Assembly: GCA_950097015.1 (NCBI GenBank)
Contig: CATNEN010000034.1
Coordinates: forward strand, 1,488,001 to 1,552,000
DNA: 64,000 nt
From: Macrostomum hystrix
Lineage: Eukaryota; Animalia; Platyhelminthes
Direction: 5' to 3'
Position numbers and translations under genes: made by a program. A model generated the notes under the pieces. The model was not told the DNA's origin, did not search any database, and worked only from the letters and a program-made list of their open reading frames with translations. Below are positions 14,691 to 34,969 of the stretch, in pieces (positions within the stretch are counted from its first letter, which is position 1; every line of letters begins with the position of its first letter).

Positions 14691-16957
14691 ATGTCCGCTG
14701 ACAAAGCCAAGTCCGGCCCGGAGGACGGCCTGACCGAGGAGCAGATCGAGGAGTACCGGGAGGCTTTCTCGCTGTTCGACAAGGACGGCGATGGCACCAT
14801 CACCAACAAGGAGCTGGCCTCGGTGATGCGGGCTCTGGGACAGAATCCCAGTCAGGACGAACTTAAAGTGAATACCGGAATGCTGGGTCATTGGGACAGT
14901 GGGTCATTGGGACAGTGGGTCATTGGGACAGTGGGTCATTGGGACAGTGGGTCATTGGGGCAGTGGGTCATTGGGACAGTGGGTCATTGGGACAGTGGGT
15001 GATTGGGGCAGTGGGTCATTGGGACAGTGGGTCATTGGGACAGTGGGTCATTGGGACAGTGGGTCATTGGGACAGTGGGTCATTGGGACAGTGGGTCATT
15101 GGGACAGTGGGTCATTGGGACAGTGGGTCATTGGGACAGTGGGTCATTGGGGCAGTGGGTCATTGGGGCAGTGGGTCATTGGGGCAGTGGGTCATTGGGA
15201 CAGTGGGTCATTGGGACAGTGGGTCATTGGGACAGTGGGTCATTGGGACAGTGGGTCATTGGGGCAGTGGGTCATTGGGGCAGTGGGTCATTGGGGCAGT
15301 GGGTCATTGGGGCAGTGGGTCATTGGGGCAGTGGGTCATTGGGGCAGTGGGTCATTGGGACAGTGGGTCATTGGGACAGTGGGTCATTTGGTCAGTGGGT
15401 CATTGGGACAGTGGGTCATTGGGGCAGTGGGTCATTGGGACAGTGGGTCATTGGGACAGTGGGTGATTGGGGCAGTGGGTCATTGGGACAGTGGGTCATT
15501 GGGACAGTGGGTCATTGGGACAGTGGGTCATTGGGACAGTGGGTCATTGGGGCAGTGGGTCATTGGGACAGTGGGTCATTGGGGCAGTGGGTCATTGGGG
15601 CAGTGGGTCATTGGGGCAGTGGGTCATTGGGACAGTGGGTCATTGGGACAGTGGGTCATTGGGACAGTGGGTCATTGGGACAGTGGGTCATTGGGACAGT
15701 GGGTCATTGGGACAGTGGGTCATTGGGACAGTGGGTCATTGGGACAGTGGGTCATTGGGGCAGTGGGTCATTGGGGCAGTGGGTCATTGGGGCAGTGGGT
15801 CATTGGGACAGTAGGTTCATTCGGAAAGTGGGGTCATTAGAGAGTTGCTTCATTTGGAAGCGGATCATTGCAAAGTGTTTTTTGGGAAGAATGAAATTTA
15901 AGAGATCGGCTAATTGGGAAGTGGGTCATCTTGGGATCAGGTCATTGTGGAAGTGGGTCTTTGCTGGAGAATCGGGTAAGTTAGGAAGTGAGTCATGGTT
16001 GGGTTAGCAGGTTTTCATGGAAGTTGGGAAAAAATCGTGCAGTGAGAAGCAGGTTGCCATCTAAGTTTGGGATTGATTATTTATATGGGAAGTTGGTCAT
16101 TGTGTAAAGTGGATCACTGGAGGGTCAGTTTTTCAGTGGGGAAGTGGGTCATTATGAGGACTGAATCGTTGGCCACTGATGAATGCCTCCCAGGGTCTGC
16201 TTAGAAATCCTCACTCCCGGCTCTCCTCTCTTCCTTCAAATATAATTTCTTCATTTGGGCGCTTCCTATTTGGCCACATGAGCACACCCAGCCCCAGGTC
16301 CCTCATCTCACGCGGTCCCACTTCACGTATTTCATTGTGGCGTGTTCGCTCAATTTCCTAGTCATTTCCAACCGCCTCTCTGGTCTCGCTGCCCCCACTA
16401 GGATCCGCGGGAAGCGAGAGGACAAAATATGATAGCGGATGGGCTGTGCCGGAATGGAAATGCTGCTGTCAGTCGCTCATAAAACATTCATCTTACTCGA
16501 CACTTCCGACCTTCAGTTGAATTCCATCCCGGCCTGACGGCTCCGCAGCCGCCCCCACCGCCCGACACCTCTCCCCACTACTCCCTAACCCTTGCCTTCC
16601 CAGGAGATGATCAAGGAGGTGGACCAGGACGGCTCCGGCAGCATTGAATTCGATGAATTCCTGGAAATGATGAAGAAGCAGATGAATAGCGCAGACTCCG
16701 AAGAGGAGGTCCGGCGCGCCTTCCGCTTATTCGACGCCGACGGCGACGGCTTCTTGAGCGCCAGCGAGCTGCACCAGGTGATGCAGAACCTTGGCGAGCG
16801 GCTCACCATGGAGGAGGTGGAGGCGATGATTGGCGAGGCCGACACTGACAGGGACGGGCAGGTCAGCTTCAGCGAATTCGCCAAGATCATGGGCGTTGGC
16901 GGCGGCGGCGGCAGCGGCGGCGGAGGCAGCGTCGTCGGGGACGAACCCGACAGCTGA
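14691..16957 (+). CDS. Calmodulin-like 4-EF-hand protein, 176 aa, 2 exons (14691-14867, 16604-16957), with Gly-rich acidic C-terminal tail
   Basis: EF loops are [36 protein letters not shown] and [12 protein letters not shown]. The phase-0 intron (AAA/gtgaat...ctaac...cag/GAG) lies at ELK/EMI, equivalent to the ELQ/DMI intron of animal calmodulins. Too divergent to be canonical CaM. Confidence 0.93.
14885..15812. repeat. 16-bp G-rich minisatellite GGGTCATTGGG(A/G)CAGT, ~58 copies, in the calmodulin-like intron
   Basis: Direct tandem copies starting 17 nt after the donor. Confidence 0.95.
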
Positions 16958-17700: not shown

Positions 17701-17760
17701 AGTGAATCTCGCATCTATTGGGGATTGAATAGGAAATCTTACCGCCAGCCAAGTGAATAT

Positions 17761-19595
17761 CATGGTCATAGCAGAGACTGAGTCTCATGGTCATAGCGGA
17801 GAATAAATATTATGGTCACTGCAGAGACTGAATATCATGGTCATAGCAGAGACTGAATCTCATGGTCATAGCAGAGACTGAATCTCATGGTCATAGCAGA
17901 GACTGAATCTCATGGTCATAGCAGAGACTGAATCTCATGGTCATTGCGGAGACTGAATCTCATGGTCATAGCAGAGACTGAATCTCATGGTCATAGCAGA
18001 GACTGAATCTCATGGTCATAGCAGAGACTGAATCTCATGGTCATAGCAGAGACTGAATCTCATGGTCATAGCAGAGACTGAATCTCATGGTCATAGCAGA
18101 GACTGAATCTCATGGTCATAGCAGAGACTGAATCTCATGGTCATAGCAGAGAATGAATCTCATGGTCATAGCGGAGACTGAATCTCATGGCTCATGGTCA
18201 TAGCAGAGACTGAATCTCATGGTCATAGCGGAGACTGAATCTCATGGCTCATGGTCATAGCAGAGACTGAATCTCATGGTCATAGCAGAGACTGAATCTC
18301 ATGGTCATAGCAGAGACTGAATCTCATGGCTCATGGTCATAGCAGAGACTGAATCTCATGGTCATAGCAGAGACTGAATCTCATGGTCATAGCAGAGACT
18401 GAATCTCATGGTCATAGCAGAGACTGAATCTCATGGTCATAGCAGAGACTGAATCTCATGGTCATAGCAGAGACTGAATCTCATGGTCATAGCAGAGACT
18501 GAATCTCATGGTCATAGCGGAGACTGAATCTCATGGCTCATGGTCATAGCGGAGACTGAATCTCATGGCTCATGGTCATAGCAGAGACTGAATCTCATGG
18601 TCATAGCAGAGACTGAATCTCATGGTCATAGCAGAGACTGAATCTCATGGCTCATGGTCATAGCAGAGACTGAATCTCATGGTCATAGCGGAGACTGAAT
18701 CTCATGGCTCATGGTCATAGCAGAGACTGAATCTCATGGTCATAGCAGAGACTGAATCTCATGGTCATAGCAGAGACTGAATCTCATGGTCATAGCGGAG
18801 ACTGAATCTCATGGCTCATGGTCATAGCAGAGACTGAATCTCATGGCTCATGGTCATAGCAGAGACTGAATCTCATGGTCATAGCAGAGACTGAATCTCA
18901 TGGTCATAGCAGAGACTGAATCTCATGGTCATAGCGGAGACTGAATCTCATGGCTCATGGTCATAGCAGAGACTGAATCTCATGGCTCATGGTCATAGCA
19001 GAGACTGAATCTCATGGTCATAGCAGAGACTGAATCTCATGGTCATAGCGGAGACTGAATCTCATGGCTCATGGTCATAGCAGAGACTGAATCTCATGGT
19101 CATAGCAGAGACTGAATCTCATGGTCATAGCAGAGACTGAATCTCATGGTCATAGCGGAGACTGAATCTCATGGCTCATGGTCATAGCAGAGACTGAATC
19201 TCATGGTCATAGCAGAGACTGAATCTCATGGTCATAGCAGAGACTGAATCTCATGGTCATAGCGGAGACTGAATCTCATGGCTCATGGTCATAGCAGAGA
19301 CTGAATCTCATGGTCATAGCAGAGACTGAATCTCATGGTCATAGCGGAGACTGAATCTCATGGCTCATGGTCATAGCAGAGACTGAATCTCATGGCTCAT
19401 GGTCATAGCAGAGACTGAATCTCATGGTCATAGCAGAGACTGAATCTCATGGTCATAGCGGAGACTGAATCTCATGGCTCATGGTCATAGCAGAGACTGA
19501 ATCTCATGGTCATAGCAGAGACTGAATCTCATGGTCATAGCAGAGACTGAATCTCATGGTCATAGCAGAGACTGAATCTCATGGTCATAGCAGAG
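17761..19595. repeat. 25-bp minisatellite CATGGTCATAGCAGAGACTGAATCT with 32-bp (+CATGGCT) variants, ~70 copies
   Basis: Direct tandem copies; the insertion variant first appears near 18185. Confidence 0.95.
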
Positions 19596-20189
19596 TGATT
19601 TTCAGTTTATCATTCATAAAAGACAAAGGCAAAATGAGATTAAGAGAATTTAAGATCTTACTAAAATTTAGTCCAAACAATGTTTTGCTAGAATAGTCTC
19701 TAAAAGGATAAAAAGTGACAGTGAAATCAAAGTGTACAACCATTAATCTGGTGTATTTCAGTCCAAAATTGTCATACAATCTTACGAAAGCGATGTCACG
19801 GTTAAAGCACGTAGCAGACAAAAATATTGCACAGAGCCAAGTATAGGGTCAAAAAAGTAGAAAAAATTGACCAAAATGGGTCACAAAAAATTGGGAATGA
19901 ATAAATAATTGTCAACGTAGCAATAGCTAAAGGCAATCAACTTTTTTTAAAATCGAATCCGCTTCAAAATAGCGTTCATTGGTAATGATTGGCCAACTGA
20001 AAAAACAGTTATGGAAGCAAAGCAAAAATCATATTAAAATGAGTAGGGCAAAAAATACAAGCTTTTAGGGTAATCTTCCGCAGAATCAGCAGCGGCAAAT
20101 GTACGAGTCCACTGAAGAGTCCAGACCGAAGGTGCTTTGCCTTAGTCCCTTTGGGGAGTTAGTTATTATGGGACTTGGGGGATGACTTC

Positions 20190-20665
20190 AGTCATTGGGG
20201 GATTTGGTCATTGGGGAACTTGTTTTTGTAGAACTTGGTTATTGGGGGACTTGGTCATTGGGGGATTTGGTCATTGGGGGATTTGGTCATTGGAGGACTT
20301 GGTCATTGGGTGATTTGGTCATTGGAGGACTTGGTCATTGGGGGATTTGGTCATTAGGGAACTTGACCATTGGGTGATTTGGTCATTGGGGGATTTGGTC
20401 ATTGGAGGACTTGGTCATTGGGTGATTTGGTCATTGGAGGACTTGGTCATTGGGGGATTTGGTCATTGGGAGACTTAATACGAGGTAATTAAGGAATTTG
20501 TTCATTGGGGACTTGGTCATTGGGGGGTTTGGTCATTAGGGGACTTGGTCATTGGGGGATTTGGTCATTGGGGGTTTGGTCATTGGGGGTTTGGTCATTG
20601 GCGGAGTGGGTCATTCGCGGATCGGGTCATTGTGGGGTAAGGTCATTGGGGGTAAGGTCATTGTG
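20190..20665. repeat. Degenerate 16-bp G-rich minisatellite GGTCATTGG(G/A)GGA(T/C)TT
   Basis: Tandem GGTCATTGG units, related in sequence to the calmodulin-intron array. Confidence 0.85.
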
Positions 20666-20922
20666 TGGCTGGGTCATTGGTATATTAAACAATTGGTAGA
20701 TTGAGTCGTTGGTAGAGTGGGTCATTGTGTCATAGCGGTTTGTGGGGCGTTGCATGGACAGGGCAGAAATCAATGATATTACAATTATCAATATACACTG
20801 TTCAATCCTGAACTGATTGTGTCGATTAAAAAGCACGGAAAACGATTAGAAAGATACACTTGTATTAATTAAGCACTGATTGAAGCTTTGAATTGCGATT
20901 GTCCGAACTCGGACAGTCAAAT

Positions 20923-23900
20923 TTAGAATTGTGCGGTGGGTGCGGCCGCCCAGCGCACAAAAATAGCCATGACCAGAGCTGCGAGCTGCGTTAGTCGGCT
21001 GGGCAGCAGATTCGAACCCGCGCCCTCGCGGCATTTCAGCATGCGATAGCTGAATCGGATTAAGGAGTTTGAAATGTTAAAATAGTCTGGATAGAGTATT
21101 TCAGAATAAATATATAGAGAATAGAGATAATTTATATCTTTGAAATAGGAGAGTGAATCTCCAAGAGTGAATTTCTGAGAGTGAATTTCTGAGAGTGAAT
21201 CTCCGAGAATATATTTTTAGAGTAAATTTCTAAGAGTGAATCTCCGAGAGTGAATCTTCGATAGTGAATCTCCGAGAGTGAATCTCCGAGAGTGAATCTC
21301 CGAGAGTGAATCTCCGAGAGTGAATCTTCGAGAGTGAATCTTCGAGAGTGAATTTCTGAGAGTGAATTTCTGAGAGTGAATCTCAGAGAATATTCAAGAG
21401 TGAATATTCTGAGTAAATCTCCGAGAATATATTTTTAGAGTAAATTTCTAAGAGTGAATCTCTGAGAGTGAATCTTCGATAGTGAATCTCCGAGAGTGAA
21501 TCTCCGAGAGTGAATCTTCGATAGTGAATCTCCGAGAGTGAATCTCCGAGAGTGAATCTCCGAGAGTGAATCTTCGAGAGTGAATTTCCGAGAGTGAATT
21601 TCTGAGAGTGAATCTCAGAGAATGAATCGTTTGTAAAAAGTTATACGATTATATGCAATCATCAGTCTGGTAGTTAATTATAATTAAAGATTAGACCAAA
21701 AATTGATAAGCATTGATTGAAGATTATAAAGTCCCAATAATTACAATTCGTGTTTCTTTAGGAATTTTCTCGAAAGAATGAAAAAGCTCACTAGTTGCTT
21801 TGGTTGCGTTGGGCCATATCATAGTGCTTGGACACAGTGCCGCCATCGAAGAACCAAATGCTGATGTCATTGTACGGATACTCGTAGCCCTGCCTGCACT
21901 CGCACTTGTAGTTGTCCAGCTCGAATTTGTTGTGCAAGGTTGGCACGCACTGTTAAATATAGTAACACATTTTGCAAATGCTCAGCTAAGCAGCACCATA
22001 GCCTACTCACACTGGAAGTTAGTAGAGTCGTGCGAATCAAAAGAGAAGATTCCTATCTAGCCTGACTCAGAGATGGCTAAGATCAATTGACACCGCCTTA
22101 TTAAGTTGCTAAAGATCAGTTTCCGCTCCCATTCTCAGTTCGCTAAAGATCAGTTTCCGCCCCCATTCTCAGTTCGCTAAAGATCAGTTTCCGCCCCCAT
22201 TCTCAGTTCGCTAAAGATCAGTTTCCGCTCCCATTCTCAGTTCGCTAAAGATCAGTTTCCGCCCCAATTCTCAGTTCGCTAAAGATCAGTTTCCGCCCCA
22301 ATTCTCAGTTCGCTAAAGATCAGTTTCCGCCCCCATTCTCAGTTCGCTAAAGATCAGTTTCCGCTCCCATTCTCAGTTCGCTAAAGATCAGTTTCCGCCC
22401 CAATTCTCAGTTCGCTAAAGATCAGTTTCCGCCCCCATTCTCAGTTCGCTAAAGATCAGTTTCCGCCCCAATTCTCAGTTCGCTAAAGATCAGTTTCCGC
22501 CCCAATTCTCAGTTCGCTAAAGATCAGTTTCCGCCCCCATTCTCAGTTCGCTAAAGATCAGTTTCCGCTCCCATTCTCAGTTCGCTAAAGATCAGTTTCC
22601 GCCCCCATTCTCAGTTCGCTAAAGATCAGTTTCCGCCCCAATTCTCAGTTCGCTAAAGATCAGTTTCCGCTCCCATTCTCAGTTCGCTAAAGATCAGTTT
22701 CCGCCCCAATTCTCAGTTCGCTAAAGATCAGTTTCCGCCCCAATTCTCAGTTCGCTAAAGATCAGTTTCCGCTCCCATTCTCAGTTCGCTAAAGATCAGT
22801 TTCCGCCCCAATTCTCAGTTCGCTAAAGATCAGTTTCCGCCCCCATTCTCAGTTCGCTAAAGATCAGTTTCCGCCCCAATTCTCAGTTCGCTAAAGATCA
22901 GTTTCCGCCCCCATTCTCAGTTCGCTAAAGATCAGTTTCCGCCCCAATTCTCAGTTCGCTAAAGATCAGTTTCCGCTCCCATTCTCAGTTCGCTAAAGAT
23001 CAGTTTCCGCCCCCATTCTCAGTTCGCTAAAGATCAGTTTCCGCCCCCATTCTCAGTTCGCTAAAGATCAGTTTCCGCTCCCATTCTCAGTTCGCTAAAG
23101 ATCAGTTTCCGCCCCAATTCTCAGTTCGCTAAAGATCAGTTTCCGCCCCCATTCTCAGTTCGCTAAAGATCAGTTTCCGCCCCAATTCTCAGTTCGCTAA
23201 AGATCAGTTTCCGCCCCCATTCTCAGTTCGCTAAAGATCAGTTTCCTCCCCCATTCTCAGTTCGCTAAAGATCAGTTTCCGCCCCAATTCTCAGTTCGCT
23301 AAAGATCAGTTTCCGCTCCCATTCTCAGTTCGCTAAAGATCAGTTTCCGCCCCAATTCTCAGTTCGCTAAAGATCAGTTTCCGCCCCAATTCTCAGTTCG
23401 CTAAAGATCAGTTTCCGCCCCAATTCTCAGTTCGCTAAAGATCAGTTTCCGCCCCCATTCTCAGTTCGCTAAAGATCAGTTTCCGCTCCCATTCTCAGTT
23501 CGCTAAAGATCAGTTTCCGCCCCCATTCTCAGTTCGCTAAAGATCAGTTTCCGCCCCCATTCTCAGTTCGCTAAAGATCAGTTTCCGCTCCCATTCTCAG
23601 TTCGCTAAAGATCAGTTTCCGCCCCAATTCTCAGTTCGCTAAAGATCAGTTTCCGCCCCAATTCTCAGTTCGCTAAAGATCAGTTTCCGCCCCATTCTCA
23701 GTTCGCTAAAGATCAGTTTCCGCTCCCATTCTCAGTTCGCTAAAGATCAGTTTCCGCCCCCATTCTCAGTTCGCTAAAGATCAGTTTCCGCCCCCATTCT
23801 CAGTTCGCTAAAGATCAGTTTCCGCTCCCATTCTCAGTTCGCTAAAGATCAGTTTCCGCCCCAATTCTCAGTTCGCTAAAGATCAGTTTCCGCCCCAATT

Positions 23901-26900
23901 CTCAGTTCGCTAAAGATCAGTTTCCGCCCCCATTCTCAGTTCGCTAAAGATCAGTTTCCGCTCCCATTCTCAGTTCGCTAAAGATCAGTTTCCGCCCCAA
24001 TTCTCAGTTCGCTAAAGATCAGTTTCCGCCCCCATTCTCAGTTCGCTAAAGATCAGTTTCCGCCCCAATTCTCAGTTCGCTAAAGATCAGTTTCCGCCCC
24101 AATTCTCAGTTCGCTAAAGATCAGTTTCCGCCCCCATTCTCAGTTCGCTAAAGATCAGTTTCCGCTCCCATTCTCAGTTCGCTAAAGATCAGTTTCCGCC
24201 CCCATTCTCAGTTCGCTAAAGATCAGTTTCCGCCCCAATTCTCAGTTCGCTAAAGATCAGTTTCCGCTCCCATTCTCAGTTCGCTAAAGATCAGTTTCCG
24301 CCCCAATTCTCAGTTCGCTAAAGATCAGTTTCCGCCCCAATTCTCAGTTCGCTAAAGATCAGTTTTCCGCTCCCATTCTCAGTTCGCTAAAGATCAGTTT
24401 CCGCCCCAATTCTCAGTTCGCTAAAGATCAGTTTCCGCCCCCATTCTCAGTTCGCTAAAGATCAGTTTCCGCCCCAATTCTCAGTTCGCTAAAGATCAGT
24501 TTCCGCCCCCATTCTCAGTTCGCTAAAGATCAGTTTCCGCCCCAATTCTCAGTTCGCTAAAGATCAGTTTCCGCTCCCATTCTCAGTTCGCTAAAGATCA
24601 GTTTCCGCCCCAATTCTCAGTTCGCTAAAGATCAGTTTCCGCCCCCATTCTCAGTTCGCTAAAGATCAGTTTCCGCTCCCATTCTCAGTTCGCTAAAGAT
24701 CAGTTTCCGCCCCAATTCTCAGTTCGCTAAAGATCAGTTTCCGCCCCCATTCTCAGTTCGCTAAAGATCAGTTTCCGCCCCCATTCTCAGTTCGCTAAAG
24801 ATCAGTTTCCGCCCCCATTCTCAGTTCGCTAAAGATCAGTTTCCGCCCCCATTCTCAGTTCGCTAAAGATCAGTTTCCGGCCCAATTCTCAGTTCGCTAA
24901 AGATCAGTTTCGCCACTTTCTCAGTTCGCTAAAGATCAGTTTCCGCCCCCATTCTCAGTTCGCTAAAGATCAATTTCCGCCCCCATTCTCAGTTCGCTAA
25001 AGATCAGTTTCCGCCCCCATTCTCAGTTCGCTAAAGATCAGTTTCCGCCCCCATTCTCAGTTCGCTAAAGATCAGTTTCCGCCCCCATTCTCAGTTCGCT
25101 AAAGATCTGTTTCCGCCCCCATTCTCAGTTCGCTAAAGATCAGTTTCCGCCCCCATTCTCAGTTCGCTAAAGATCAGTTTCCGCCCCCATTCTCAGTTCG
25201 CTAAAGATCAGTTTCCGCCCCCATTCTCAGTTCGCTAAAGATCAGTTTCCGCCACTTTCTCAGTTCGCGAAGACACAACACAAAAGGGCAGGGCAAGTCG
25301 AGCCTCGGAGGGCCACCTTTGGCGCCGAACAGAACCGTCGCGGTGGCCAACGCGCTGTCCTCCCTCCTTCATCGCGAGATGAGCAGGAGGAAGTGACGGA
25401 CCCGGGCTAAGTATATTAGCGACGATTCCATCAGTGCCAAGAGTGGGACTGTCAGCTCCGCGTGTCAGGGGGCAGGGTCAGGGGGCAGCAACTGGGACTC
25501 ACGTAGCTGCTCTCAAAGTGACAGGGCGCCGAGTTCTTGAAGTAGTTGGCCTCGTAGAAGTTGGCCGGGCACTGGTTGATGTCCATCTTGTCTAGCAGCA
25601 CGGTGACGGTGGTGACGCCTAGAAATTGCAGGCTTCTCTGCTCAGAGTAGCCAAAGAAGGGCGCTGCCACGGTGATGACCCAGCTATTCACGTGGCGACT
25701 ATTGGGGTCGCGGTTCCTATTGCAGTCAAAGTACGGCTTGGACCAGTACATATCGGCTAGCCTGGGCGCTTTGTAATACAATGGGAAGCGTTGAAACGGC
25801 TTCGAGTCGGTGCCGTTCAGATCCGAGCGCACGTAGGGCTTGTTGACGAAGGTCTCAAGGCCGTAGGTGTTGGAGGCCCAGCGCTGTTTGAGCACTCGAA
25901 ACCAGTCGCGCTCAAAGTACGCCCGTTCCAGCGACCAGCCGGCCGCGTCTTCGGCGATGAAGCTCAGCTGGCGCTGTTTCTGATCGCCGGCATCGTCCGC
26001 GGACACCTTGAACGCCGTGGGGCCGAAGTATTCAATGCGGCGCTTGAGCAGTGGATCCCAGAAGGCCTCCCGATCGAAGTAGATGCCGGCTGACCGGATC
26101 CAGCCGTCCGACATCACGGTGGAGTACACCTCGCCTAGCAGCTGGTCGCGGTTCAGATGCTTGTCGCTGTAAAACGGGCCGTAGACTTCGTCCGGGTTGA
26201 CGTTCTGCGAGAAGGCGCTGAGAAAGTGCGACAGGCGGAGAGCGCTGCGGGCTTGCACCTGCGGGATGGGCGGAGGCGGCTCCGGGTTCGAATCGAAGTC
26301 CTGATTCGAATCCTATTCAGGTTATACTGATCCTAAAACGCAACCCAAGACACACCTGAATCACTACCCAAGCCCACCTATATCTCCACTTTAGGTCCAC
26401 CTGAAGCTCCCCCACCCAAGCCACCTGAAGCCGGACCCAAGCCCAACCCAAGCCACACCTGAAGCTCCACCTGAAGCCCTACTCAAGCCCATCTGAAGCC
26501 CACCAAAGCCCACTCAAGTCACACCTGAAAGCTTGTCTCAGCGCCATAGCCGACCTCGCCAGGCAGCTCCAGCTCCTGGGGCGTCCTGGCGCCGCAGTTT
26601 TCAGGCGTAACTCCGGCCTTGAAACTCATGAGCTGCTTTGCCGCCTCGTACCGGCCCGAATCAAAGGTCGCCAGCCGGCCCAGGTAATGAATGTTCTGAT
26701 CGCCCAGATCGGCAGGTGTGGACACACTCCGTGTGGCCCTACTCAGCAGGCTGCTCACCAGACCGCCCAGCCGGCCTACAGGGCTCTTCTGCTGCCTGCC
26801 CAGTTCGCGGTCTCGCCGGTCGTGCTCGGATACTTTGTGCCGTAGGTCGGCAAGACCGCTGGCATTGTACAGGTTCATCAGGTGTACAATCTCGCGGGTC

Positions 26901-29900
26901 TCGTCAACCGATCGCTTTTTTCGCCGGCTATTAGGCGTGATGCCCCGCTCCGTCAGGCGCTGCAGCTTCCAATCGATTGGGATGCACTCAAATTTATCGG
27001 CCTCGGCCTCGGAGGCCTGCTCGATGTCCTGGCCGAGAAACGGCCCGTTCTGCCAGTAGGGATAACGATAGCCCGGCCGGCAGTGGCACAGGTAGCCGCC
27101 GCGTTGAAAGCCATAGCCGGGCAGAGGCTCGCACTGGCAGTTGGCAGTGAGATATATTACAATTTTTGCGCGATTTATTCTCCCTTCTCTACTTGTAAGT
27201 AGTGTGCTTAGAATTCATTATTTTATAAGTGGAAAAAATCTACGTCAATTTTACAACACAGAAACAAAATCTGCGAAAAGCAGCTTACAATCTCATTGAG
27301 AGATAAAAAAGAGAGGGGAGAAACTAGAGATTAGTAGAGGGGAGAGATCAGACAGGGGAGACAAGACAGGGGGAGATAAGACACTGCAGAGATGAGACAC
27401 GGAAGAGATGAGACACGGAAGAGATGAGACACGGAAGAGATGAGAGACGGCAGAGATGAGACACGGAAGAGATGAGACACGGCAGAGATGAGACACGGCA
27501 GAGATGAGACACGGGAGAGATGAGACACGGCAGAGATGAGACACGGCAGATATGAGACACGGGGGAGATGAGATTCGAGAAAATTGGTGCGGGGTGAGGC
27601 GAGCAAGCCGAATCTGGGCCGTGGGCCGGGGGCACCCGACCCAGCAACGGGGCTGGCACACAACTTACCGCAATACTCTAGTGAGCAGAGCAAACCGCCT
27701 CAGTGGAGCAGGCGGTTTGGGAAGCAGCGGCGGCCAAGCGGGGGCTCCCCTCAGGGCCAGCCCTTCAACTTTATATCCCCCTGCCAGGCACAGCCGACCG
27801 CCTCATCCTCCGCCGATTCTCCCACCCAGACTCCCACATGGAGAACTGGCGGCAAGGCCGGCGGACTGTCTGGGAGGGTGAGGGAGGGGGCGCGAGGCTG
27901 GACTAGGCCAGGGTGCCGCGGGAAGGGACGGGAGTGAGGAGAGGGCCAGTGAGAGGGGATCGGGCATCGATCGATCCGAATATCCCCTGCGATTTCCAGC
28001 TTCCACCGCAGCAGCAGCAGCAGATTCGCCTTGCTCTCAACCAAATCCCTCTGCAAGTCAATGTCTGGTCGGTCTATCGTCATCGCTAATCCCAAACTCC
28101 CCTTTCCAAATCCCACGATGGGATCTCGCGAGAAACAGCCCAGAGATGAGGGAAGGGAGAAACAGGCTGGCGAATGAGACGTGTACAATGCTGTATAAGA
28201 CAGAAAAGGCTTAGGAGAATATGAGAGAGGGAGTGGGTGCATGTGTGTGCCTGCCTGTCTGTGTCAGATAGTCCAGAAAGCCAAACTAAGTAAAAAACTT
28301 GTTAGTTGGTTAGCCCTTGCAAGCAAAAACGGGGAAAAAAACTGGCAGTCTAGGAGAAAAACAGACAGGCTGGGAGAGAAACAGACAGGCTGGGAGAGAA
28401 ACAGATAGGCTGGGAGAGAAACAGATAGGCTGGGAGAGAAACAGACAGGCTGGGAGAGAAACAGACAGGCTGGGAGAGAAACAGACAGGCTGGGAGAGAA
28501 ACAGACAGGCTGGGAAAGAAACAGACAGGTTGGGAGACAAACTCACCAGGGTGGTACTGCGGCAGCGGGCCACGCCGCTGAAGTAGGTCCTGTCCTGCGA
28601 GTCAGGCGACCTGTCGCACGGATCGAAGTCGATGCGTAGAAAGTCAAGGTCCGTGACGGTGATGGCCACATATCTGCGCGCATTCAGAGTTGAATGGGAA
28701 TTATTAAGATGGGAATACGTAGTCGGATGGGATCCATTGTGGATGAAGCTTACAGAGATAATTGGGTTAGGACTGAAGCATTCGCTCTCGGCGGTCACTC
28801 GCTGCCCCCCCTCACCCCAAGGGAAATTTTCTGTAGAAAAATGGGTCGCTTCGCACGTTCATCTTTCCTACCATTCCACTCTCCCTCTCTATCAAGCAGT
28901 CTCTTTCCGATTGTCCCTATTTCTCTTTCATTTTATCTTCCTTTTCAAGACCGTCACTTGGCCCTTGGCCAGTTTCACACCACCCAGAGACTGTCTGACT
29001 GAATGAAAGAAGGGATTTTAACCAATCGATAAACCCTAACCTAGCCTTTCACGGAAGAGACAGAAAATTGCGCACGGTCGCTTCTAAAACTGCCCGAACT
29101 GTGGAAAATCCCATGGGATAGCTGCCCCAGCTGCATATGAGCCAAACTGTGTGATCAGGATTGGGTTTGGATTCTAGGAAATTAAATTGAGATGCGCACG
29201 ACAGATAAACGGGAATGAGTCAGATAGGGCTAGATTATCCAGCAATGCAGTTTCACAGGCTGCGGGTAGACTCTGCAGCTATTTTTTTAATAGATCTCAG
29301 ACATTCGGGACTAGATCTCTATGAGATTCGAGACTAGATCTCTATGAGATTAGAGACTAGATCTCTATGAGATTCGAGACTAGATCTCTATGAGATTAGA
29401 GACTCGATCTCTATGAGATTAAAGACTAGATCTCTATGAGATTAAAGACTAGATCTCTATGAGATTCGAGACTAGATCTCTATGAGATTCGAGACTAGAT
29501 CTCTATGAGATTAGAGACTAGATCTCTATAAGATTCGAGACTAGATCTCTATAAGATTCGAGAAAAGATCTCTATGAGATTCGAGACTAGATCTCTATGA
29601 GATTCGAGACTAGATCTCTATGAGATTCGAGACTAGATCTCTATGAGATTAGAGACTCGATCTCTATGAGATTCGAGACTAGATCTCTATGAGATTCGAG
29701 ACTAGATCTCTATGAGATTCGAGACTAGATCTCTATGAGATTAGAGTCCAGATCTCTATGAGATTCGAGAGTAGATCTCTATGAGATTAGAGACCAGATC
29801 TCTATGAGATTCGAGACCAGATCTCTATGAGATTCGAGAAAAGATCTCTATGAGATTCGGGACTAGATCTCTATGAGATTCGAGACAAGATCTCTATGAG

Positions 29901-32819
29901 ATTCGAGACTAGATCTCTATGAGATTAGAGACTAGATCTCTATGAGATTCGAGACTAGATCTCTATGAGATTAGAGACTAGATCTCTATGAGATTCGAGA
30001 CTAGATCTCTATGAGATTAGAGACTCGATCTCTATGAGATTAAAGACTAGATCTCTATGAGATTAAAGACTAGATCTCTATGAGATTCGAGACTAGATCT
30101 CTATGAGATTAGAGACTCGATCTCTATGAGATTAAAGACTAGATCTCTATGAGATTCGAGAAAAGATCTCTATGAGATTCGAGACTAGATCTCTATGAGA
30201 TTAGAGTCCAGATCTCTATGAGATTCGAGACTAGATCTCTATGAGATTAGAGACTAGATCTCTATAAGATTCGAGAAAAGATCTCTATGAGATTCGAGAC
30301 TAGATCTCTATGAGATTAGAGACTAGATCTCTATGAGATTCGAGAAAAGATCTCTATGAGATTCGAGAAAAGATCTCTATGAGATTAGAGTCCAGATCTC
30401 TATGAGATTCGAGACTAGATCTCTATGAGATTCGAGAAAAGATCTCTATGAGATTCGAGAAAAGATCTCTATGAGATTCGAGACTAGATCTCTATGAGAT
30501 TAGAGACCAGATCTCTATGAGATTAGAGACTAGATCTCTATGAGATTAGAGACTAGATCTATATGAGATTCGAGAATAGATCTTAATAAGATTCGAGAGA
30601 TCTCTATGAAAAATAGTATTATATTGTTTGTTGACGCGGCTTGAAGCAGCGATCTACTGATATTCGCGTCCTAATACCAGGTCATGCAAAATGGTTGCTG
30701 GGCTTACTGTGGCCTACGTAGCTTTAGCTCCGGACTGTAGCGAAACATGAAGTCGATGACTGGCGCCACCGCGCTAATGATCCACTTATTGGACCTGCCG
30801 CAGTCAAAGTAGGGCCTTGAAAAGTACACGGGCTGGTAGTTTTCGGAGATACCTGGCGAAGGCGGCCCGAAAAACTGCTTCTTGTGCAAAGGTATTGGAT
30901 CCATCTGGCCAATCTTGGTGGCGTTGTAGATTATGTAATCGTACTGATGCTTGCCCCTGTAGTCTGTCTTCGAATCCGGTATAAAATCGATGTCGTTGGA
31001 CACATCGCGAACCACCATGGAGTTTAGCGGGTGCCAAGGCGCAACGTAGTCATGGTCCGGACCAGAGCCGAGGTCGTTAACCTGTTCGTGATTGACATGT
31101 GTTAGCGTTGTTACCTGCTGAATTCCATCTCTAATCTTCTCTGCAATCTATTTTTTCTTTCGACTGCAAATTTAGTCTCCCATTCTACTCCACACTATGT
31201 CTCGTCTCCACTCCACTGTCTGTCCTCCTCTCTACTCCACACTATGTCTCTTCTCCACTCCACTGTCTGTCCTCCTCTCTACTCCACACTATGTCTCTTC
31301 TCCACTCCACTGTCTGTCCTCCTCTCTACTCCACACTATGTCTCTTCTCCACTCCACTGTCTGTCCCCCTCTCTACTCCACACTATGTCTCTTCTCCACT
31401 CCACTGTCTGTCCTCCTCTCTACTCCACACTATGTCTCTTCTCCACTCCACTGTCTGTCCTCCTCTCTACTCCACACTATGTCTCTTCTCCACTCCACTG
31501 TCTGTCCTCCTCTCTACTCCACACTATGTCTCTTCTCCACTCCACTGTCTGTCCTCCTCTCTACTCCACACTATGTCTCTTCTCCACTCCACTGTCTGTC
31601 CTCCTCTCTACTCCACACTATGTCTCTTCTCCACTCCACTGTCTGTCCTCCTCTCTACTCCACACTATGTCTCTTCTCCACTCCACTGTCTGTCCTCCTC
31701 TCTACTCCACACTATGTCTCTTCTCCACTCCACTGTCTGTCCCCCTCTCTACTCCACACTATGTCTCTTCTCCACTCCACTGTCTGTCCTCCTCTCTACT
31801 CCACACTATGTCTCTTCTCCACTCCACTGTCTGTCCCCCTCTCTACTCCACACTATGTCTCTTCTCCACTCCACTGTCTGTCCTCCTCTCTACTCCACAC
31901 TATGTCTCTTCTCCACTCCACTGTCTGTCCTCCTCTCTACTCCACACTATGTCTCTTCTCCACTCCACTGTCTGTCCTCCTCTCTACTCCACACTATGTC
32001 TCTTCTCCACTCCACTGTCTGTCCCCCTCTCTACTCCACACTATGTCTCTTCTCCACTCCACTGTCTGTCTCCCATTCTACTCCAGTCATTGTCCCTTTT
32101 ACTCCAGTCATTGTCCCTTTTACTCCAGTCATTGTCCCTTTTACTCCAGTCATTGTCCCTTTTACTCCAGTCATTGTCCCTCTACTCCAGTCATTGTCCC
32201 TCTACTCCAGTCATTGTCCCTCTCCGCCCACCTGAATAGTGTTGTTAGTGGGCTCCCTCAGCCAGTTAACAGGATCTTGATAATCATCAACAAGGAAGGC
32301 CTTGGGTCCAAACAGCGGGAGGGTGTTGTTGAACAGCAGAATGGTTGGATACCAGTTCGCGTACTGGGTGTGCGTGTCGAAGAGAACGCCTGAGCCGTTC
32401 ATCAGGCCGACGCTTGAGGAAACATCGGCGCTGGCGCCCAGATAATAATACAGCAGGCCCGGCAGCATGGGAAAATCCGTGACCTTGGACTCGTTGAGTC
32501 GCTGAAGGATGTACGAGTAAAAATAGGCCCTGTTCAAAGCTATGTTGTGCATGTGGATTAAGTTGGTCCGGTTAGGAAAGATCACAATCTGTGGCAGCAC
32601 GTTGAACTTTGGTCGTTGGCCAACCGCATTAGCTGGCAGCCTGAGTGACTCGATACTCTTTGATTTGCAATTGAATTCGTTCACCGTGTCCATCTTCTCC
32701 ATGATCTCGTCAAAGTTGTCCCGACCCATCCAGCGGTAGGGGCCAATGGCAATGCTGCCATGACCCAACAAGGCAACAATCGCAATTAGTGTTACTATGG
32801 CGATGCGCCCAAGTCCCAT
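20923..32819 (-). CDS. Secreted/GPI-type 912-aa protein with two tandem GPR158/GPR179-like Cache+EGF modules and no 7TM domain; 7 coding exons (32819-32232, 31081-30708, 28673-28547, 27133-26525, 26258-25503, 21949-21792, 21049-20923)
   Basis: All junctions are GT-AG, with phases 0,2,0,0,0,2 and a 2739-nt open frame. Signal peptide MGLGRIAIVTLIAIVALLGHGSIA. Module 1 has FSRPYFDCG..WIIS..P, DLDFLRIDFDPC and CEPLPGYGFQRGGYLCHCRPGY. Module 2 has WSKPYFDC..WVIT..PFFG..FLGV..LLDKMDINQC and CVPT..YKCECRQGY. These match the GPR158 ectodomain pattern (PYLEC..W.VT...FRGVMKVDINLQKVDIDQC...CMP..GAYECICKAGF). The protein ends MLKCREGAGSNLLPSRLTQLAALVMAIFVRWAAAPTAQF*. Confidence 0.88.
21150..21622. repeat. 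14-bp minisatellite GAGAGTGAATCTCC (degenerate), intron 6 of the twin-Cache gene
   Basis: Tandem units with TCTCC/TTTCT/TCTTC variants. Confidence 0.9.
22112..25268. repeat. 34-bp minisatellite AAGATCAGTTTCCGC(CCCC/TCCC/CCCA)ATTCTCAGTTCGCTA, ~93 copies, intron 5 of the twin-Cache gene
   Basis: Period of 34 with three interspersed single-base variants. Confidence 0.97.
26350..26520. repeat. Degenerate ACCTGAAGCCC-type repeat in intron 4 of the twin-Cache gene
   Basis: Recurrent CCTGAAGC/CCCAAGCC units running up to the donor at 26524. Confidence 0.6.
27388..27570. repeat. 16-bp minisatellite GAGATGAGACACGG(C/A)A, ~11 copies
   Basis: Direct tandem copies. Confidence 0.9.
28353..28537. repeat. 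20-bp minisatellite GGGAGAGAAACAGACAGGCT, ~9 copies
   Basis: Direct tandem copies abutting the minus-strand donor at 28546. Confidence 0.9.
29311..30607. repeat. 23-bp minisatellite CTAGATCTCTATGAGATT(C/A)GAGA, ~56 copies
   Basis: Period of 23 with several variant units. Confidence 0.95.
31185..32221. repeat. Compound array: 47-bp unit (CTACTCCACACTATGTCTCTTCTCCACTCCACTGTCTGTCCTCCTCT, ~19x) followed by a 21-bp unit (TACTCCAGTCATTGTCCCTTT, ~7x)
   Basis: Fills nearly all of intron 31082-32231. Confidence 0.95.
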
Positions 32820-34969
32820 GGCTGAAAGAAACAACAGTAATGCGAAAAATCAGTCCTTACATATACATCCTTAAATTGGCATAGAATAGCTACTTTGTAA
32901 GGACTTTTAAAGCATTTAAACTATACAAACATGTAGCCAATTTTTAGACAAATTTAGGCAAACAAAAAGTATATTAGTGAAAGAATTTGTGATGAAAACA
33001 CATTTATTTTAGCTAAAAAACAAAACTGTGTAAAACTGTTATTAAAAAGATCACACAGCCAACTTAGGTCAGTTAAAAATATTAAAAATATTTTAATCTA
33101 ATATACAATATTCTAATTAACTAAGGTATTTAACAATCTTACAAGCAGAAGTAATTTTGCATTAGCAATTGTAAAATCTGATTTAAACAAAAATAAGACA
33201 GCAAAAAATGGATTACAAAAATACACTGCCAATTTAATTGGGAGAAAATATTTTTTTGCCCATATTTCTATAATACACTATTACTATATAGTGTATATAG
33301 TGTAATTTAGTTCTTATTAGAGATGTAATCAGATCTTGTTTGGACAAGATCTAGGCATTTTGGTGATTTTAGGAGTTTTCATTTTTCAAAAAAGTAGACA
33401 CAAGATTTTAAAAAGTTGAATTTCAGACTTTCAATAATTCTGTATGAAGAAGCAGTAATTGATATAGTTGATTCATTTCATAGCTTTCTAAAGTTTTTAT
33501 CTATCCTCTTTCAATTTCAGAAGACAACTTTAATGATTTGTTAATTATGATATATACCATGTAAAGACTGAATTATGACCCAAGTGTGAAATGTTCCCAT
33601 CACACTAACGAAAAATGTATCTAACAAATGGCGTTATTAGCTTCATAGCCTTACCTTTCTGAAGAAGTGGAAATGTATGCTGATTGCTGAAAAATTTCAA
33701 TTTTACCTTACTTATGACCTCATTGACTCACTGACACATTAAAGCAATCAAGTTTAAAAATGTCATTTATTATTAAAAACATAGTCTGTTTTGTTAAATA
33801 GTTATTTTATTTATTATTATTCAAACTGGTGCATTTATCAGGATATAGTATATGAATATATTAGCTGATAGCAAGTATAAAAGCAAACAATTTTATGCTA
33901 AACATAAAACAATCCATCCAAACTTAATTATGTGTCTTGCTGTTTTGTTTTCTCTCACATTTCTGAACTTAAGGTTCTTGCATTTTATTGAATTGCATCT
34001 CAACCAAACTCAGATTTTTACACCTCTAGTTATTATCATTGTGCAGCTATTCTCCATGTTATGCATAATTCCTTTGTGGTATACTTTCTGATATTTTTAT
34101 AAATTTTGTTAAGATTCATGTCAATAATAAATATATTTTGTTGACTCCAAATAAGTTTCTTTGGAGGCAGACTTGACTGCTATTAGTGTTTTAAATGAAA
34201 TTATTTATTGGAAATACAAGAGTGTCATCTAAAGCATAAGATATTCAACTCCAGATTAAAAAATCAACACAGGGTTTCCATTTTCCAATAGCTAGCTATG
34301 TAGCTATGATAAGCTACAATTTTCTTTAATAAAAAAAGTTTTATAACACTTTCAAATGGTAATATATGAGCAGTAAAAACTATATATAAATATATATTCC
34401 TAGCTAAGTAGTTCGGGTAAAATTTGTGAGAAGCAGTTGTCACTTAGCATAGCAGTAGGCCTAACATAGTTTATAGTAGTGTACTGTAAGTTAAAGGTTC
34501 TTATATATTATAAAAGACAGCAGAAATAAAAACAATTTTCATATCATCTTAGTAATTCATCTTACTCTACATACCAAACTCGCAAATACAACAAATTCTT
34601 GAATCACGATACATAAGGAAATATAATAAGTCCTAGGCGGAAGGCTCGCATATTGAAAAAAGCGGATACAACTTTCAAGTCAAAAGGAGACAGTTATGCT
34701 TCTTTGGAATGGTTTAGTGTTGGAGCTTTCGCTGATAAAAAATCAAGTCATTTCAAGCAGCAAAGTTTTTCCTAAGGGCTAAAGTTAGCTGAAGGGCAAA
34801 ATTATTATTTGTTAATGTTAATGAAAATGCGATAACCAAAGAAGTATAGTTTCAAAGTATTCAAAGTTTTAATATTATCTGTAACTTAAGTTAAACCTCA
34901 TAAGCGCTAAATCTGTAAAGTCTCATAATTTTATTTTAAGTTCTATTGTGTAGTTGTGAGAAAATTAGT

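What the first reader, a model, noticed from the sequence alone, without database searches (positions are those of the whole stretch)
20923..32819. Twin-Cache/EGF GPR158-like ectodomain protein without the GPCR: candidate GPI-anchored small-molecule sensor, decoy or co-receptor
Seen: a 7-exon, phase-consistent 912-aa ORF with a signal peptide and two homologous modules. Each module starts V..NC.....L.LP and contains PYFDC-W-P, a DID/INxC-type motif and an EGF-like C..C..GY repeat. A terminal exon encodes KCREGAGS plus a single short hydrophobic tail, with no 7TM. Established: in GPR158/GPR179 one such Cache+EGF ectodomain sits on a class C 7TM, and the GPR158 Cache domain binds glycine. Inference: a stand-alone duplicated ligand-binding ectodomain could buffer, present or relay amino-acid-like ligands to a separate receptor. 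I know of no characterised protein with this architecture.
Basis: partly seen in the sequence, partly recalled or inferred. Interest (0 to 1): 0.8.

Follow-up and report, generated by a model that had tools for sequence, protein, structure and literature searches.

The report
Lipid-anchored double glycine-receptor-like ectodomain protein
This flatworm gene really encodes two tandem copies of the sensor ectodomain of the GPR158/GPR179 brain receptors with no membrane-spanning receptor part, and it belongs to a strongly conserved family, present from flatworms to Drosophila, for which I found no study.

Summary
Spliced contigs of about 3.1 kb in three public runs join exon 6 to exon 7 at the predicted bases. 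They carry the end of exon 5 and stop in a 3'UTR, with no 7TM exon.

Both halves match Pfam GPR158_179_EC and are homologous to each other over their full length (hhalign E 6e-38). For the 84%-identical Macrostomum lignano orthologue, both halves give confident models (pLDDT 82 and 90). The best structural matches are GPR179 and GPR158 ectodomains, then bacterial Cache sensors.

The gene is not unique. Twin-module, 7TM-less orthologues of about 800-980 aa occur in flatworms, molluscs, annelids, brachiopods, nemerteans, tardigrades, nematomorphs, crustaceans and insects, including Drosophila. Databases call them "uncharacterized" or "GPR158/179 extracellular domain-containing", and I found no paper on them.

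All share 16 cysteines and a C-terminal "CR + small residues + short hydrophobic end", which is a GPI-signal pattern. Most non-arthropod members have a furin-type site between the modules.

GPI anchoring and action through a partner are inferred, and the ligand is unknown. I class it as a new variant of a known kind. This scan had not noted it before.

The parts
32232..32844 (-). Exon 1: about 25 nt of 5'UTR (inferred), ATG at 32819, signal-peptide-like N-terminus (aa 1 to about 24, 32819-32748), and the first part of module 1 including the VNEFNC..LRLP start
   Evidence: Model rebuilt. The N-terminal hydrophobic segment spans aa 1-27. Contigs carry 2479 letters upstream of exon 6, equal to exons 1-5 plus 25. 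Orthologue P0001 starts in the same way.
30708..31081 (-). Exon 2: middle of module 1, ending in PYFDC..W..AP (start of the PF22572 match)
28547..28673 (-). Exon 3: module 1 RIDFDPC segment up to the Cys-rich stalk. It enters in phase 2 and leaves in phase 0.
26525..27133 (-). Exon 4: EGF-like Cys-rich end of module 1 (CHCRPGY), the inter-module linker, and the start of module 2 (VTPENC..LELP)
   Evidence: The intron position before the Cys is shared with the exon 5|6 boundary.
26909..26923 (-). RRKKR (aa 434-438): furin-type R-x-[KR]-R site in the linker
   Evidence: The motif occurs in the linker of 91 of 135 family members and is about 150-fold enriched over the rest of the protein. Cleavage itself is inferred.
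25503..26258 (-). Exon 5: bulk of the module 2 Cache domain (PF22572 E 6e-15; PYFDC, MDINQC)
   Evidence: Its last letters are seen joined to exon 6 in the contigs.
21792..21949 (-). Exon 6: EGF-like Cys-rich part of module 2 (CECRQGY) and the stalk
   Evidence: Both of its junctions are seen in contigs of runs X3, X4 and X5.
20545..21049 (-). Exon 7: last 41 codons, stop codon at 20923-20925, then about 290-380 nt of 3'UTR (contigs end at 20545 or 20634)
   Evidence: The joint 21792->21049 appears in three runs, and the contigs end at 20545 or 20634.
20926..21033 (-). C-terminal GPI-signal-like tail (aa 877-912): the invariant Cys-Arg, small residues (EGAGS), a spacer, a hydrophobic stretch of about 10 residues, then the end of the protein
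   Evidence: The pattern is conserved in all 10 aligned phyla-spanning members. Family statistics: a median of 29 aa after CR, a small-residue triplet in 131 of 135 members, and no internal TM-like segment in 134 of 135.
26957..32744 (-). Module 1 (aa 26-422; Cache plus Cys-rich EGF-like part; 8 invariant Cys), spread over exons 1-4
   Evidence: HMM envelope. Model of the orthologous module has pLDDT 81.6. Best folds are GPR179 and GPR158. Profile against GPR158 gives E 2.4e-12.
21013..26671 (-). Module 2 (aa 518-883; Cache plus Cys-rich EGF-like part plus stalk; 8 invariant Cys), spread over exons 4-7
   Evidence: HMM envelope. Model has pLDDT 89.7. GPR179 scores Z 14.8 over 258 residues and GPR158 Z 12.7 over 222. 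Profile against GPR158 gives E 1.6e-19.

Best explanation
Shown. The locus is an expressed 7-exon gene for a secretory-pathway glycoprotein of 912 aa. The protein has a signal peptide, two tandem homologous copies of the mGlyR(GPR158)/GPR179-type ectodomain (each a Cache sensor fold followed by a Cys-rich EGF-like stalk), a variable linker, and a short C-terminal hydrophobic tail. It has no transmembrane receptor domain. It is the orthologue (84% identity) of a Macrostomum lignano protein. It belongs to an old family whose two modules were already distinct before spiralians and ecdysozoans split.

Inferred. The tail is a GPI-attachment signal, so the mature protein is tethered by lipid to the outer face of the cell, with module 2 next to the membrane. 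Module 2 is the one closest to the receptor ectodomain. With no cytoplasmic part, the protein must act through a partner. It would bind an extracellular ligand with its Cache modules and present or relay it to a transmembrane protein, or hold a matrix or adhesion partner in place. The ligand could be a small polar molecule or a matrix protein or proteoglycan, as for GPR158/179.

Because GPR158/179 ectodomains work as Cache-Cache homodimers, the two modules in one chain may form a built-in pseudo-dimer. In non-arthropod members, including this one (RRKKR), a furin-type site suggests the two modules are cut apart during maturation.
For: - Gene model and transcript.
- Two PF22572 modules.
- Module-to-module homology.
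- Cache plus Cys-rich fold for both modules of the orthologue.
- Sequence-profile matches to solved GPR158 and GPR179 ectodomains.
- Family across the protostome phyla sampled, with no 7tm_3 domain, while the true GPR158-like GPCRs tested, some from the same species or groups (Gordionus, Tubulanus, Mytilus, a mayfly), have it.
- Tree: M1 clan 100/100 and M2 clan 99/98, each holding flatworms, molluscs, annelids and ecdysozoans; the GPCR ectodomains sit on the M2 side.
- Receptor ectodomains score higher against the module 2 HMM than against the module 1 HMM.
- Conserved GPI-like tail and no internal TM segments.
- Furin-motif enrichment in the linker.
- All 16 Cys of the window protein are the family-invariant ones.
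- GPR158/179 ectodomains dimerise through their Cache helices and bind glycine or pikachurin: PMC11437087 and PMC12834959.
- The ESM Atlas whole-chain model of the orthologue has pTM 0.75 and superposes on the family representative at TM 0.77 over 779 residues. This hints at a fixed module-module arrangement.
Against: - No GPI predictor or experiment was available. The window protein's hydrophobic run is short (about 10 residues, then Arg, then WAAAPTAQF), so it is weaker than in most relatives.
- Ligand binding, partner use, furin cleavage and the pseudo-dimer are all untested.
- The runs are of unrecorded type. I call them RNA only because their contigs are spliced.
Confidence: 0.8

Rival explanations
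1. The model is only the N-terminal part of an ordinary GPR158-like class C GPCR whose 7TM exons lie further downstream, or it is a decaying GPCR pseudogene.
For: GPR158/179-type ectodomains were previously known only on 7TM receptors. Databases label some relatives 'G-protein coupled receptor 158'. Introns here are long and full of repeats.
Against: Spliced contigs in three runs end in a 3'UTR after exon 7. No 7TM-like ORF lies in the 21 kb downstream, and a plus-strand EF-hand gene intervenes. About 240 listed relatives of 800-980 aa carry no 7tm_3 domain, and 134 of 135 have no internal TM-like segment. The terminal exon is conserved across phyla. The reading frame is intact with all 16 invariant Cys.
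Confidence: 0.02
2. The C-terminal hydrophobic stretch is not removed for a GPI anchor. It stays as a short membrane anchor, or the protein is released as a soluble secreted or matrix factor. Release could follow cleavage at the dibasic site, with module 1 acting as a diffusible ligand or decoy.
For: The window protein's hydrophobic run is short and interrupted by Arg. The linker has a furin-type site that could free module 1. No GPI predictor was run.
Against: The tail follows the classic GPI pattern in 131 of 135 members: small residues, then a spacer of about 8 aa, then about 14 uncharged residues at the very end with no cytoplasmic residues. The pattern is conserved while the sequence is not. 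A run of 10-14 residues is too short for a stable helix across the membrane.
Confidence: 0.12
3. The modules have lost small-molecule sensing and serve purely as protein- or proteoglycan-binding adhesion and organiser domains, in the way GPR179 binds pikachurin and GPR158 binds heparan-sulfate proteoglycans. On this view the 'sensor' reading is wrong even though the architecture is right.
For: GPR179 does not respond to glycine and binds pikachurin through its Cache domain (PMC11437087; PDB 8D1B is among the top fold matches). GPI-anchored neuronal proteins are commonly adhesion or co-receptor subunits (general knowledge). Insect orthologues are 65-80% identical along their whole length, which fits large protein interfaces.
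Against: Polar residues are shared by both modules and by receptor ectodomains: D199/D670, Y208/Y680, the acidic residue of PYFDC (which aligns with E271 of human GPR158), W296/W759 and D336/D792. That is what a retained Cache pocket would look like. Their place in the pocket was not tested.
Confidence: 0.4

Closest known systems
GPR158 (mGlyR) and GPR179, class C orphan/glycine GPCRs (PDB 7EWL, 7SHE, 7EWP, 8IRJ, 8D1B)
   Same: Each module equals their whole ectodomain: a Cache domain plus a Cys-rich EGF-like stalk. Profile E-values are 1.6e-19 for module 2 and 2.4e-12 for module 1. They are the top Foldseek matches. VIA-align gives Z 14.8 and 12.7 over 258 and 222 residues. The PY(F/L)(D/E)C, D-x-x-C and C-x-C-x-x-G motifs are shared.
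   Different: The protein has no 7tm_3 domain and no cytoplasmic RGS7-binding tail. It has two ectodomains in one chain instead of one, and a GPI-like C-terminus. The modules form their own clans, separate from receptor ectodomains, in the tree.
Database-only family 'GPR158/179 extracellular domain-containing protein' (e.g. M. lignano PAA76402/A0A267FTW9, Octopus XP_014776491, D. simulans GD20036/B4R1S4, Anopheles AGAP001418)
   Same: Same architecture, the same 16 Cys, the same tail, and the same module order. Identity is 84% to the M. lignano protein, 43% to Octopus and 38% to Drosophila.
   Different: Nothing of note. The window gene is an orthologue in another Macrostomum-like genome. M. 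lignano also has a 963-aa paralogue at 64% identity. Arthropod members have a short 38-42-aa linker without the furin-type site.
Bacterial dCache/PDC sensor domains of chemoreceptors and histidine kinases (e.g. 3LI9, 3LIC, 6D8V, CqsR, Tlp3, PctA-C)
   Same: The core of each module superposes on the ligand-binding distal PDC domain, with Z 15-16 and rmsd 2.3-2.8 over about 140 residues. There is a weak Pfam PF22673 match.
   Different: Sequence identity is 10-23%. The modules carry large insertions and a eukaryotic Cys-rich stalk. The ligand-binding motif was not tested.
GPI-anchored ligand-binding co-receptors (GFR-alpha, CNTFR-alpha, glypicans): a functional analogy only
   Same: A ligand-binding ectodomain on a lipid anchor that must signal through a separate transmembrane partner. 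This is an inference from the architecture.
   Different: There is no sequence or fold relationship, and no partner is known here.

Membership tests
GPR158/GPR179 (mGlyR-type) class C GPCRs | Extracellular Cache domain of the GPR158_179_EC type | tested here: met
   PF22572 hits both modules. Supported by the PDB profile and fold matches.
GPR158/GPR179 (mGlyR-type) class C GPCRs | Cys-rich EGF-like stalk after the Cache domain | tested here: met
   The C-x-C-x-x-G-Y part aligns with the GPR158 stalk. The VIA alignment runs through model residues 6-366.
GPR158/GPR179 (mGlyR-type) class C GPCRs | Class C seven-transmembrane domain (Pfam 7tm_3) | tested here: not met
   Orthologues P0001 and P0395 have no 7tm_3 domain, whereas true receptors have it. 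There are no internal TM-like segments. The transcript ends after exon 7.
GPR158/GPR179 (mGlyR-type) class C GPCRs | Cytoplasmic tail that recruits RGS7-Gbeta5 | tested here: not met
   The protein ends 36 residues after the last ectodomain Cys.
Twin GPR158/179-ectodomain, 7TM-less protostome family | Two modules in the order M1 then M2, each clustering with its own kind | tested here: met
   In the tree the window's M1 lies in the M1 clan (100/100) and its M2 in the M2 clan (99/98), each next to M. lignano.
Twin GPR158/179-ectodomain, 7TM-less protostome family | 8 + 8 invariant cysteines | tested here: met
   The window's Cys positions 51, 290, 340, 358, 364, 379, 381, 413 and 543, 745, 796, 812, 819, 834, 836, 877 are the invariant columns.
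Twin GPR158/179-ectodomain, 7TM-less protostome family | C-terminal 'L-x-C-R, small residues, short hydrophobic end' | tested here: met
GPI-anchored proteins | N-terminal signal peptide | tested here: inconclusive
   A hydrophobic N-terminus (aa 1-27) is present in the window protein and in relatives. No SignalP-type tool was available.
GPI-anchored proteins | C-terminal signal: small omega-site residues, polar spacer, hydrophobic tail, nothing after it | tested here: met
   Rule-based check: the window has EGAGS + NLLPSRLTQ + LAALVMAIFV.. then the end. The family pattern holds in 131 of 135 members.
GPI-anchored proteins | Release by PI-PLC or a chemically identified anchor | not testable with these tools
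   Experiment needed
Cache/PDC sensor superfamily | PDC fold | tested here: met
   Z 15-16 to bacterial distal PDC domains, with Foldseek probability 1.00.
Cache/PDC sensor superfamily | Occupied small-ligand pocket with conserved binding residues | not tested
   Model coordinates are not readable in the sandbox. The paper that defines the glycine pocket is not held. Only shared polar columns could be listed.

The most novel reading that the evidence does not exclude
The protein is a single-chain pseudo-dimer of the metabotropic-glycine-receptor ectodomain on a GPI anchor. It would serve as the ligand-binding subunit of a two-component receptor found across protostomes, in the manner of GFR-alpha. 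It would sense an amino-acid-like or other small extracellular signal and pass it to a separate transmembrane transducer, for instance a smog/CG31760-type GPR158-like GPCR contacted through the Cache dimer interface. On this reading Cache-based chemical sensing in animals is not confined to GPCRs and calcium-channel alpha2-delta subunits.
Probability: 0.2. Interest if true: 0.85.

Novelty: new variant of a known kind. Interest (0 to 1): 0.62.

Why it matters
The Cache/EGF ectodomain of GPR158 (mGlyR) and GPR179 is treated in the literature as a metazoan invention tied to a class C 7TM (PMC12716839). Here it exists as a stand-alone, duplicated and probably lipid-anchored protein. That protein is single- or low-copy, predates the spiralian-ecdysozoan split, and is unusually conserved: insect orthologues are 65-80% identical across orders.

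Such conservation without any published function marks a blind spot in invertebrate cell-surface biology. Because Drosophila, Anopheles, Schistosoma and Macrostomum all carry it, the function is directly testable by genetics and RNAi. It could also shed light on how GPR158/179 ectodomains dimerise and which ligands they ancestrally bound.

For annotation, many family members are wrongly named as GPCRs.

Tried and rejected
1. I suspected exon 7 was a chance ORF in a tRNA-derived repeat, because it contains GGTTCGAATC and sits beside tandem arrays. ARAGORN, Rfam and a window-wide pattern search found nothing. Homologues and spliced contigs then showed the exon is real.

2. I looked for 7TM exons downstream using minus-strand open segments, tblastn of the model and ORF lists. 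None was found.

3. P0046 has two EC modules plus 7tm_3 and is a UniParc-only record. It looked like a possible ancestor. Its two modules are nearly identical (branch lengths 0 and 0.007), so it is a recent duplication or a model artefact and is unrelated to the M1/M2 split.

4. Paper searches under gene identifiers, and under GPR158 combined with Drosophila, GPI or Cache, found nothing on this family. The Drosophila hits concern smog, which is a true GPCR.

5. The Science 2023 mGlyR paper (PMC10751545) is not held. I therefore could not cite the glycine-pocket residues. Only S172 is named in a paper that is held.

6. Pocket mapping on my models was not possible because coordinates are not exposed.

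7. The full spliced window protein has no reference, so it was not sent to any search or fold tool. I used exon pieces and the orthologue P0001 instead.

Full report
**Observation**

On the minus strand, seven open segments join through GT..AG introns into one 2739-nt reading frame of 912 codons plus a stop. The exons are:

| Exon | Coordinates |
|---|---|
| 1 | 32819-32232 |
| 2 | 31081-30708 |
| 3 | 28673-28547 |
| 4 | 27133-26525 |
| 5 | 26258-25503 |
| 6 | 21949-21792 |
| 7 | 21049-20923 |

The introns are filled with tandem arrays, so the exons stand out clearly.

The two halves carry the quoted motifs. They align to each other with a score of 173 against 36.6 +/- 5.1 for shuffled sequence. 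The intron that precedes the first Cys of the EGF-like part is at the same position and phase in both halves. Pfam PF22572 (GPR158_179_EC) hits pieces of both halves, at E 6e-15 for exon 5 alone.

**The 3' end, which was the weak point**

I first doubted exon 7. It contains a tRNA-B-box-like GGTTCGAATC and lies next to arrays. ARAGORN, Rfam and a pattern search gave nothing. Two independent lines then settled the matter.

- Every full-length relative ends in the same way: R-[YF]-D-x-L-x-C-R, a few small residues, then a 12-20-residue hydrophobic stretch and the stop.
- Public contigs match the prediction. Runs X3-X6 hold 0.77-0.82 of the sampled words of exon 4-intron-exon 5, which is the exonic fraction of 0.84. 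Laid on 19596-22103, one contig of about 3.1 kb in each of X3, X4 and X5 is 100% identical. Each skips 21792->21049 exactly (GT..AG on the minus strand) and continues at 21949 with the last 30 letters of exon 5. Each runs on to 20545 or 20634, roughly 290-380 nt past the stop. Each has 2479 letters upstream of exon 6, equal to exons 1-5 (2454) plus 25.

The three runs belong to one study, so this counts as one source. Their type is not on record, and I call them RNA because the contigs are spliced. No transcript leaves 21792 for another exon. Downstream there is no 7TM-like ORF, and a plus-strand EF-hand gene lies at 14691-16957.

**Relatives**

The claim rested on an absence of relatives, and an exon-sized query cannot find full-length kin in the word search. 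I therefore ran the exhaustive representative search with exon 5. It returned 151 hits.

- The best hit is a 911-aa Macrostomum lignano protein matched in two stretches.
- Proteins of about 800-980 aa, most of them matched in two stretches, follow at 33-42% identity.
- Cluster look-ups place these in Schistosoma, Octopus, scallops, Biomphalaria, shrimps, a nematomorph and a tardigrade.
- A profile search and an insect-seeded search added annelids, a brachiopod, a nemertean, cestodes and trematodes, Collembola and every major insect order. These include Drosophila (D. simulans GD20036, 807 aa) and Anopheles (AGAP001418).
- All are named 'uncharacterized', 'GPR158/179 extracellular domain-containing protein' or, wrongly, 'G-protein coupled receptor 158'.
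- None of the roughly 240 listed carries 7tm_3. True GPR158-like receptors from a nematomorph, a nemertean and a mussel, among others, do carry it.
- The ESM Atlas holds a cluster of 1026 such proteins.

The window protein is 83.7% identical to the M. lignano protein over 908 residues. It is 64% identical to a second M. lignano paralogue, 43% to Octopus and 38% to Drosophila.

**Fold**

The spliced window protein has no reference, so I folded the two modules of the M. lignano orthologue using 46-sequence alignments.

| | Module 1 | Module 2 |
|---|---|---|
| pLDDT / pTM | 81.6 / 0.81 | 89.7 / 0.85 |
| Foldseek top matches | GPR179 (8IRJ, 8D1B), GPR158 (7EWL, 7EWP), then bacterial double-Cache sensors | Same order |
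| PDB sequence profile vs GPR158 | E 2.4e-12 | E 1.6e-19 |

VIA-align was run on module 2. It gives GPR179 Z 14.8 over 258 residues and GPR158 Z 12.7 over 222, covering Cache plus stalk. Bacterial distal PDC domains score Z 15-16 over about 140 residues. The two module profiles match each other at E 6e-38 over 313 columns. Each half is therefore a complete GPR158/179-type ectodomain.

**History**

I built a tree of 16 M1 modules, 16 M2 modules and 11 receptor ectodomain sequences.

- M1 forms one clan (100/100) and M2 another (99/98). Each contains flatworms, lophotrochozoans and ecdysozoans in roughly species order.
- The duplication therefore predates the spiralian-ecdysozoan split.
- Receptor ectodomains sit on the M2 side of the M1 branch. 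They also score higher against the M2 HMM than the M1 HMM, for example 159 against 96.
- The membrane-proximal module is thus the more receptor-like one, and M1 is the more diverged copy.
- P0046 has two EC modules plus 7tm_3. Its modules are nearly identical, so it is a recent duplication or an artefact and not an ancestor.

**Anchor and processing**

Among 135 full-length members, 134 have no internal TM-like segment. The tail after the invariant Cys-Arg has a median length of 29 residues. A small-residue triplet lies within 10 residues in 131 of 135 members, followed by an uncharged run of about 14 residues at the very end. This is the textbook GPI-signal pattern, conserved in form but not in sequence. 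The window tail (CREGAGS-NLLPSRLTQ-LAALVMAIFV-RWAAAPTAQF) fits, though its hydrophobic run is short.

An R-x-[KR]-R motif occurs in the linker of 91 of 135 members. It usually lies 1-8 residues before module 2 and is about 150 times denser there than elsewhere. It is absent from arthropods, whose linkers are 38-42 aa. The window protein has RRKKR at residues 434-438. The protein has nine N-glycosylation sequons, and its 16 Cys are exactly the family-invariant set.

GPI attachment and cleavage are inferences.

**Mechanism**

The shown parts are the architecture, the expression, the folds and the conservation.

The inferred part is a lipid-tethered surface protein that binds something with its Cache modules and works through a partner, because it has no cytoplasmic part. 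The literature held here supports the following:

- GPR158 uses its Cache domain for glycine and taurine (PMC12834959).
- GPR179 does not respond to glycine and binds the matrix protein pikachurin.
- Both ectodomains are homodimers through the Cache helices alpha-I and alpha-II (PMC11437087).

Two modules in one chain could therefore be a built-in pseudo-dimer. A long helix early in each module carries a dense run of conserved residues (HNMALNRAFFYSY in M1, ARTALRLAHFLS in M2). The Atlas whole-chain model of the orthologue has pTM 0.75 and superposes on the family representative at TM 0.77 over 779 residues. These are hints and not a test.

Polar columns shared by M1, M2 and the receptors could mark a retained pocket. 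They are D199/D670, Y208/Y680, the acidic residue of PYFDC (aligned with E271 of human GPR158), W296/W759 and D336/D792. I could not place them in three dimensions.

I put a protein or proteoglycan ligand at about 0.4, a small-molecule ligand at about 0.3, and leave the rest open.

**Novelty**

The gene is not a member of the GPR158/179 receptor family, because the 7TM and the tail were tested and are absent. It is a member of a database-catalogued but apparently unstudied family. No paper on it turned up. A recent survey treats the Cache/EGF module only as part of GPCRs. I rate it a new variant of a known kind. It is of real interest because of its breadth, its conservation and its testability in Drosophila, but it is not peculiar to this genome.

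**Limits**

- No GPI or signal-peptide predictor was available.
- I made no full-length model of my own.
- The hit lists were capped, so absence outside protostomes is not shown.
- The RNA evidence comes from assembled contigs of one study.

Noticed in passing
window 22104-25268, 29291-30609, 31184-32085, 21149-21628, 27326-27573, 28353-28542: Every larger intron of the gene is dominated by its own tandem array. Examples are 34 bp x 93 copies at 96% match in intron 5, 23 bp x 58 copies in intron 2, and 47 bp x 19 copies in intron 1. Different units occupy different introns, and the intergenic DNA downstream (5658-8156, 9350-10256, 14884-15838, 17754-19595) looks the same.
   Followed up: partly
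window 14691-16957 (+): Two-exon EF-hand (calmodulin/troponin-C-like) gene on the opposite strand, convergent with the twin-ectodomain gene. Its intron holds a 16-bp x 60 array. It is Pfam EF-hand positive.
   Followed up: partly
window 61-957 (+): Terminal exon of a purple-acid-phosphatase-like metallophosphoesterase (Metallophos + Metallophos_C).
   Followed up: partly
window 50222-54328 (-): Ty3/gypsy-type retrotransposon with long open frames: a gag-like ORF, then RT-RNaseH, then integrase. The frames are split at about 51750-51850. It was only described.
   Followed up: partly
window 55826-56473 and 61849-62289 (-): Fibronectin type III exons of another minus-strand gene, upstream of the retrotransposon.
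   Followed up: no
protein P0046 (UniParc UPI00078A07BE; kin of Lingula XP_013395484): A GPR158-like GPCR model with two nearly identical EC modules before its 7tm_3 domain. It is probably a very recent tandem duplication or a gene-model or assembly artefact.
   Followed up: partly
family linker, e.g. window protein aa 434-438 (window 26909-26923): Furin-type R-x-[KR]-R sites are about 150-fold enriched in the inter-module linker of non-arthropod members. They are missing from arthropods, whose linker has shrunk to 38-42 aa. This suggests a lineage difference in whether the two modules are cut apart.
   Followed up: partly
database names of relatives: Several 7TM-less family members are named 'G-protein coupled receptor 158', 'Putative g-protein coupled receptor' or, in Schistosoma japonicum and Biomphalaria, 'fras1 related extracellular matrix protein'. 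These names are misleading annotation.
   Followed up: no
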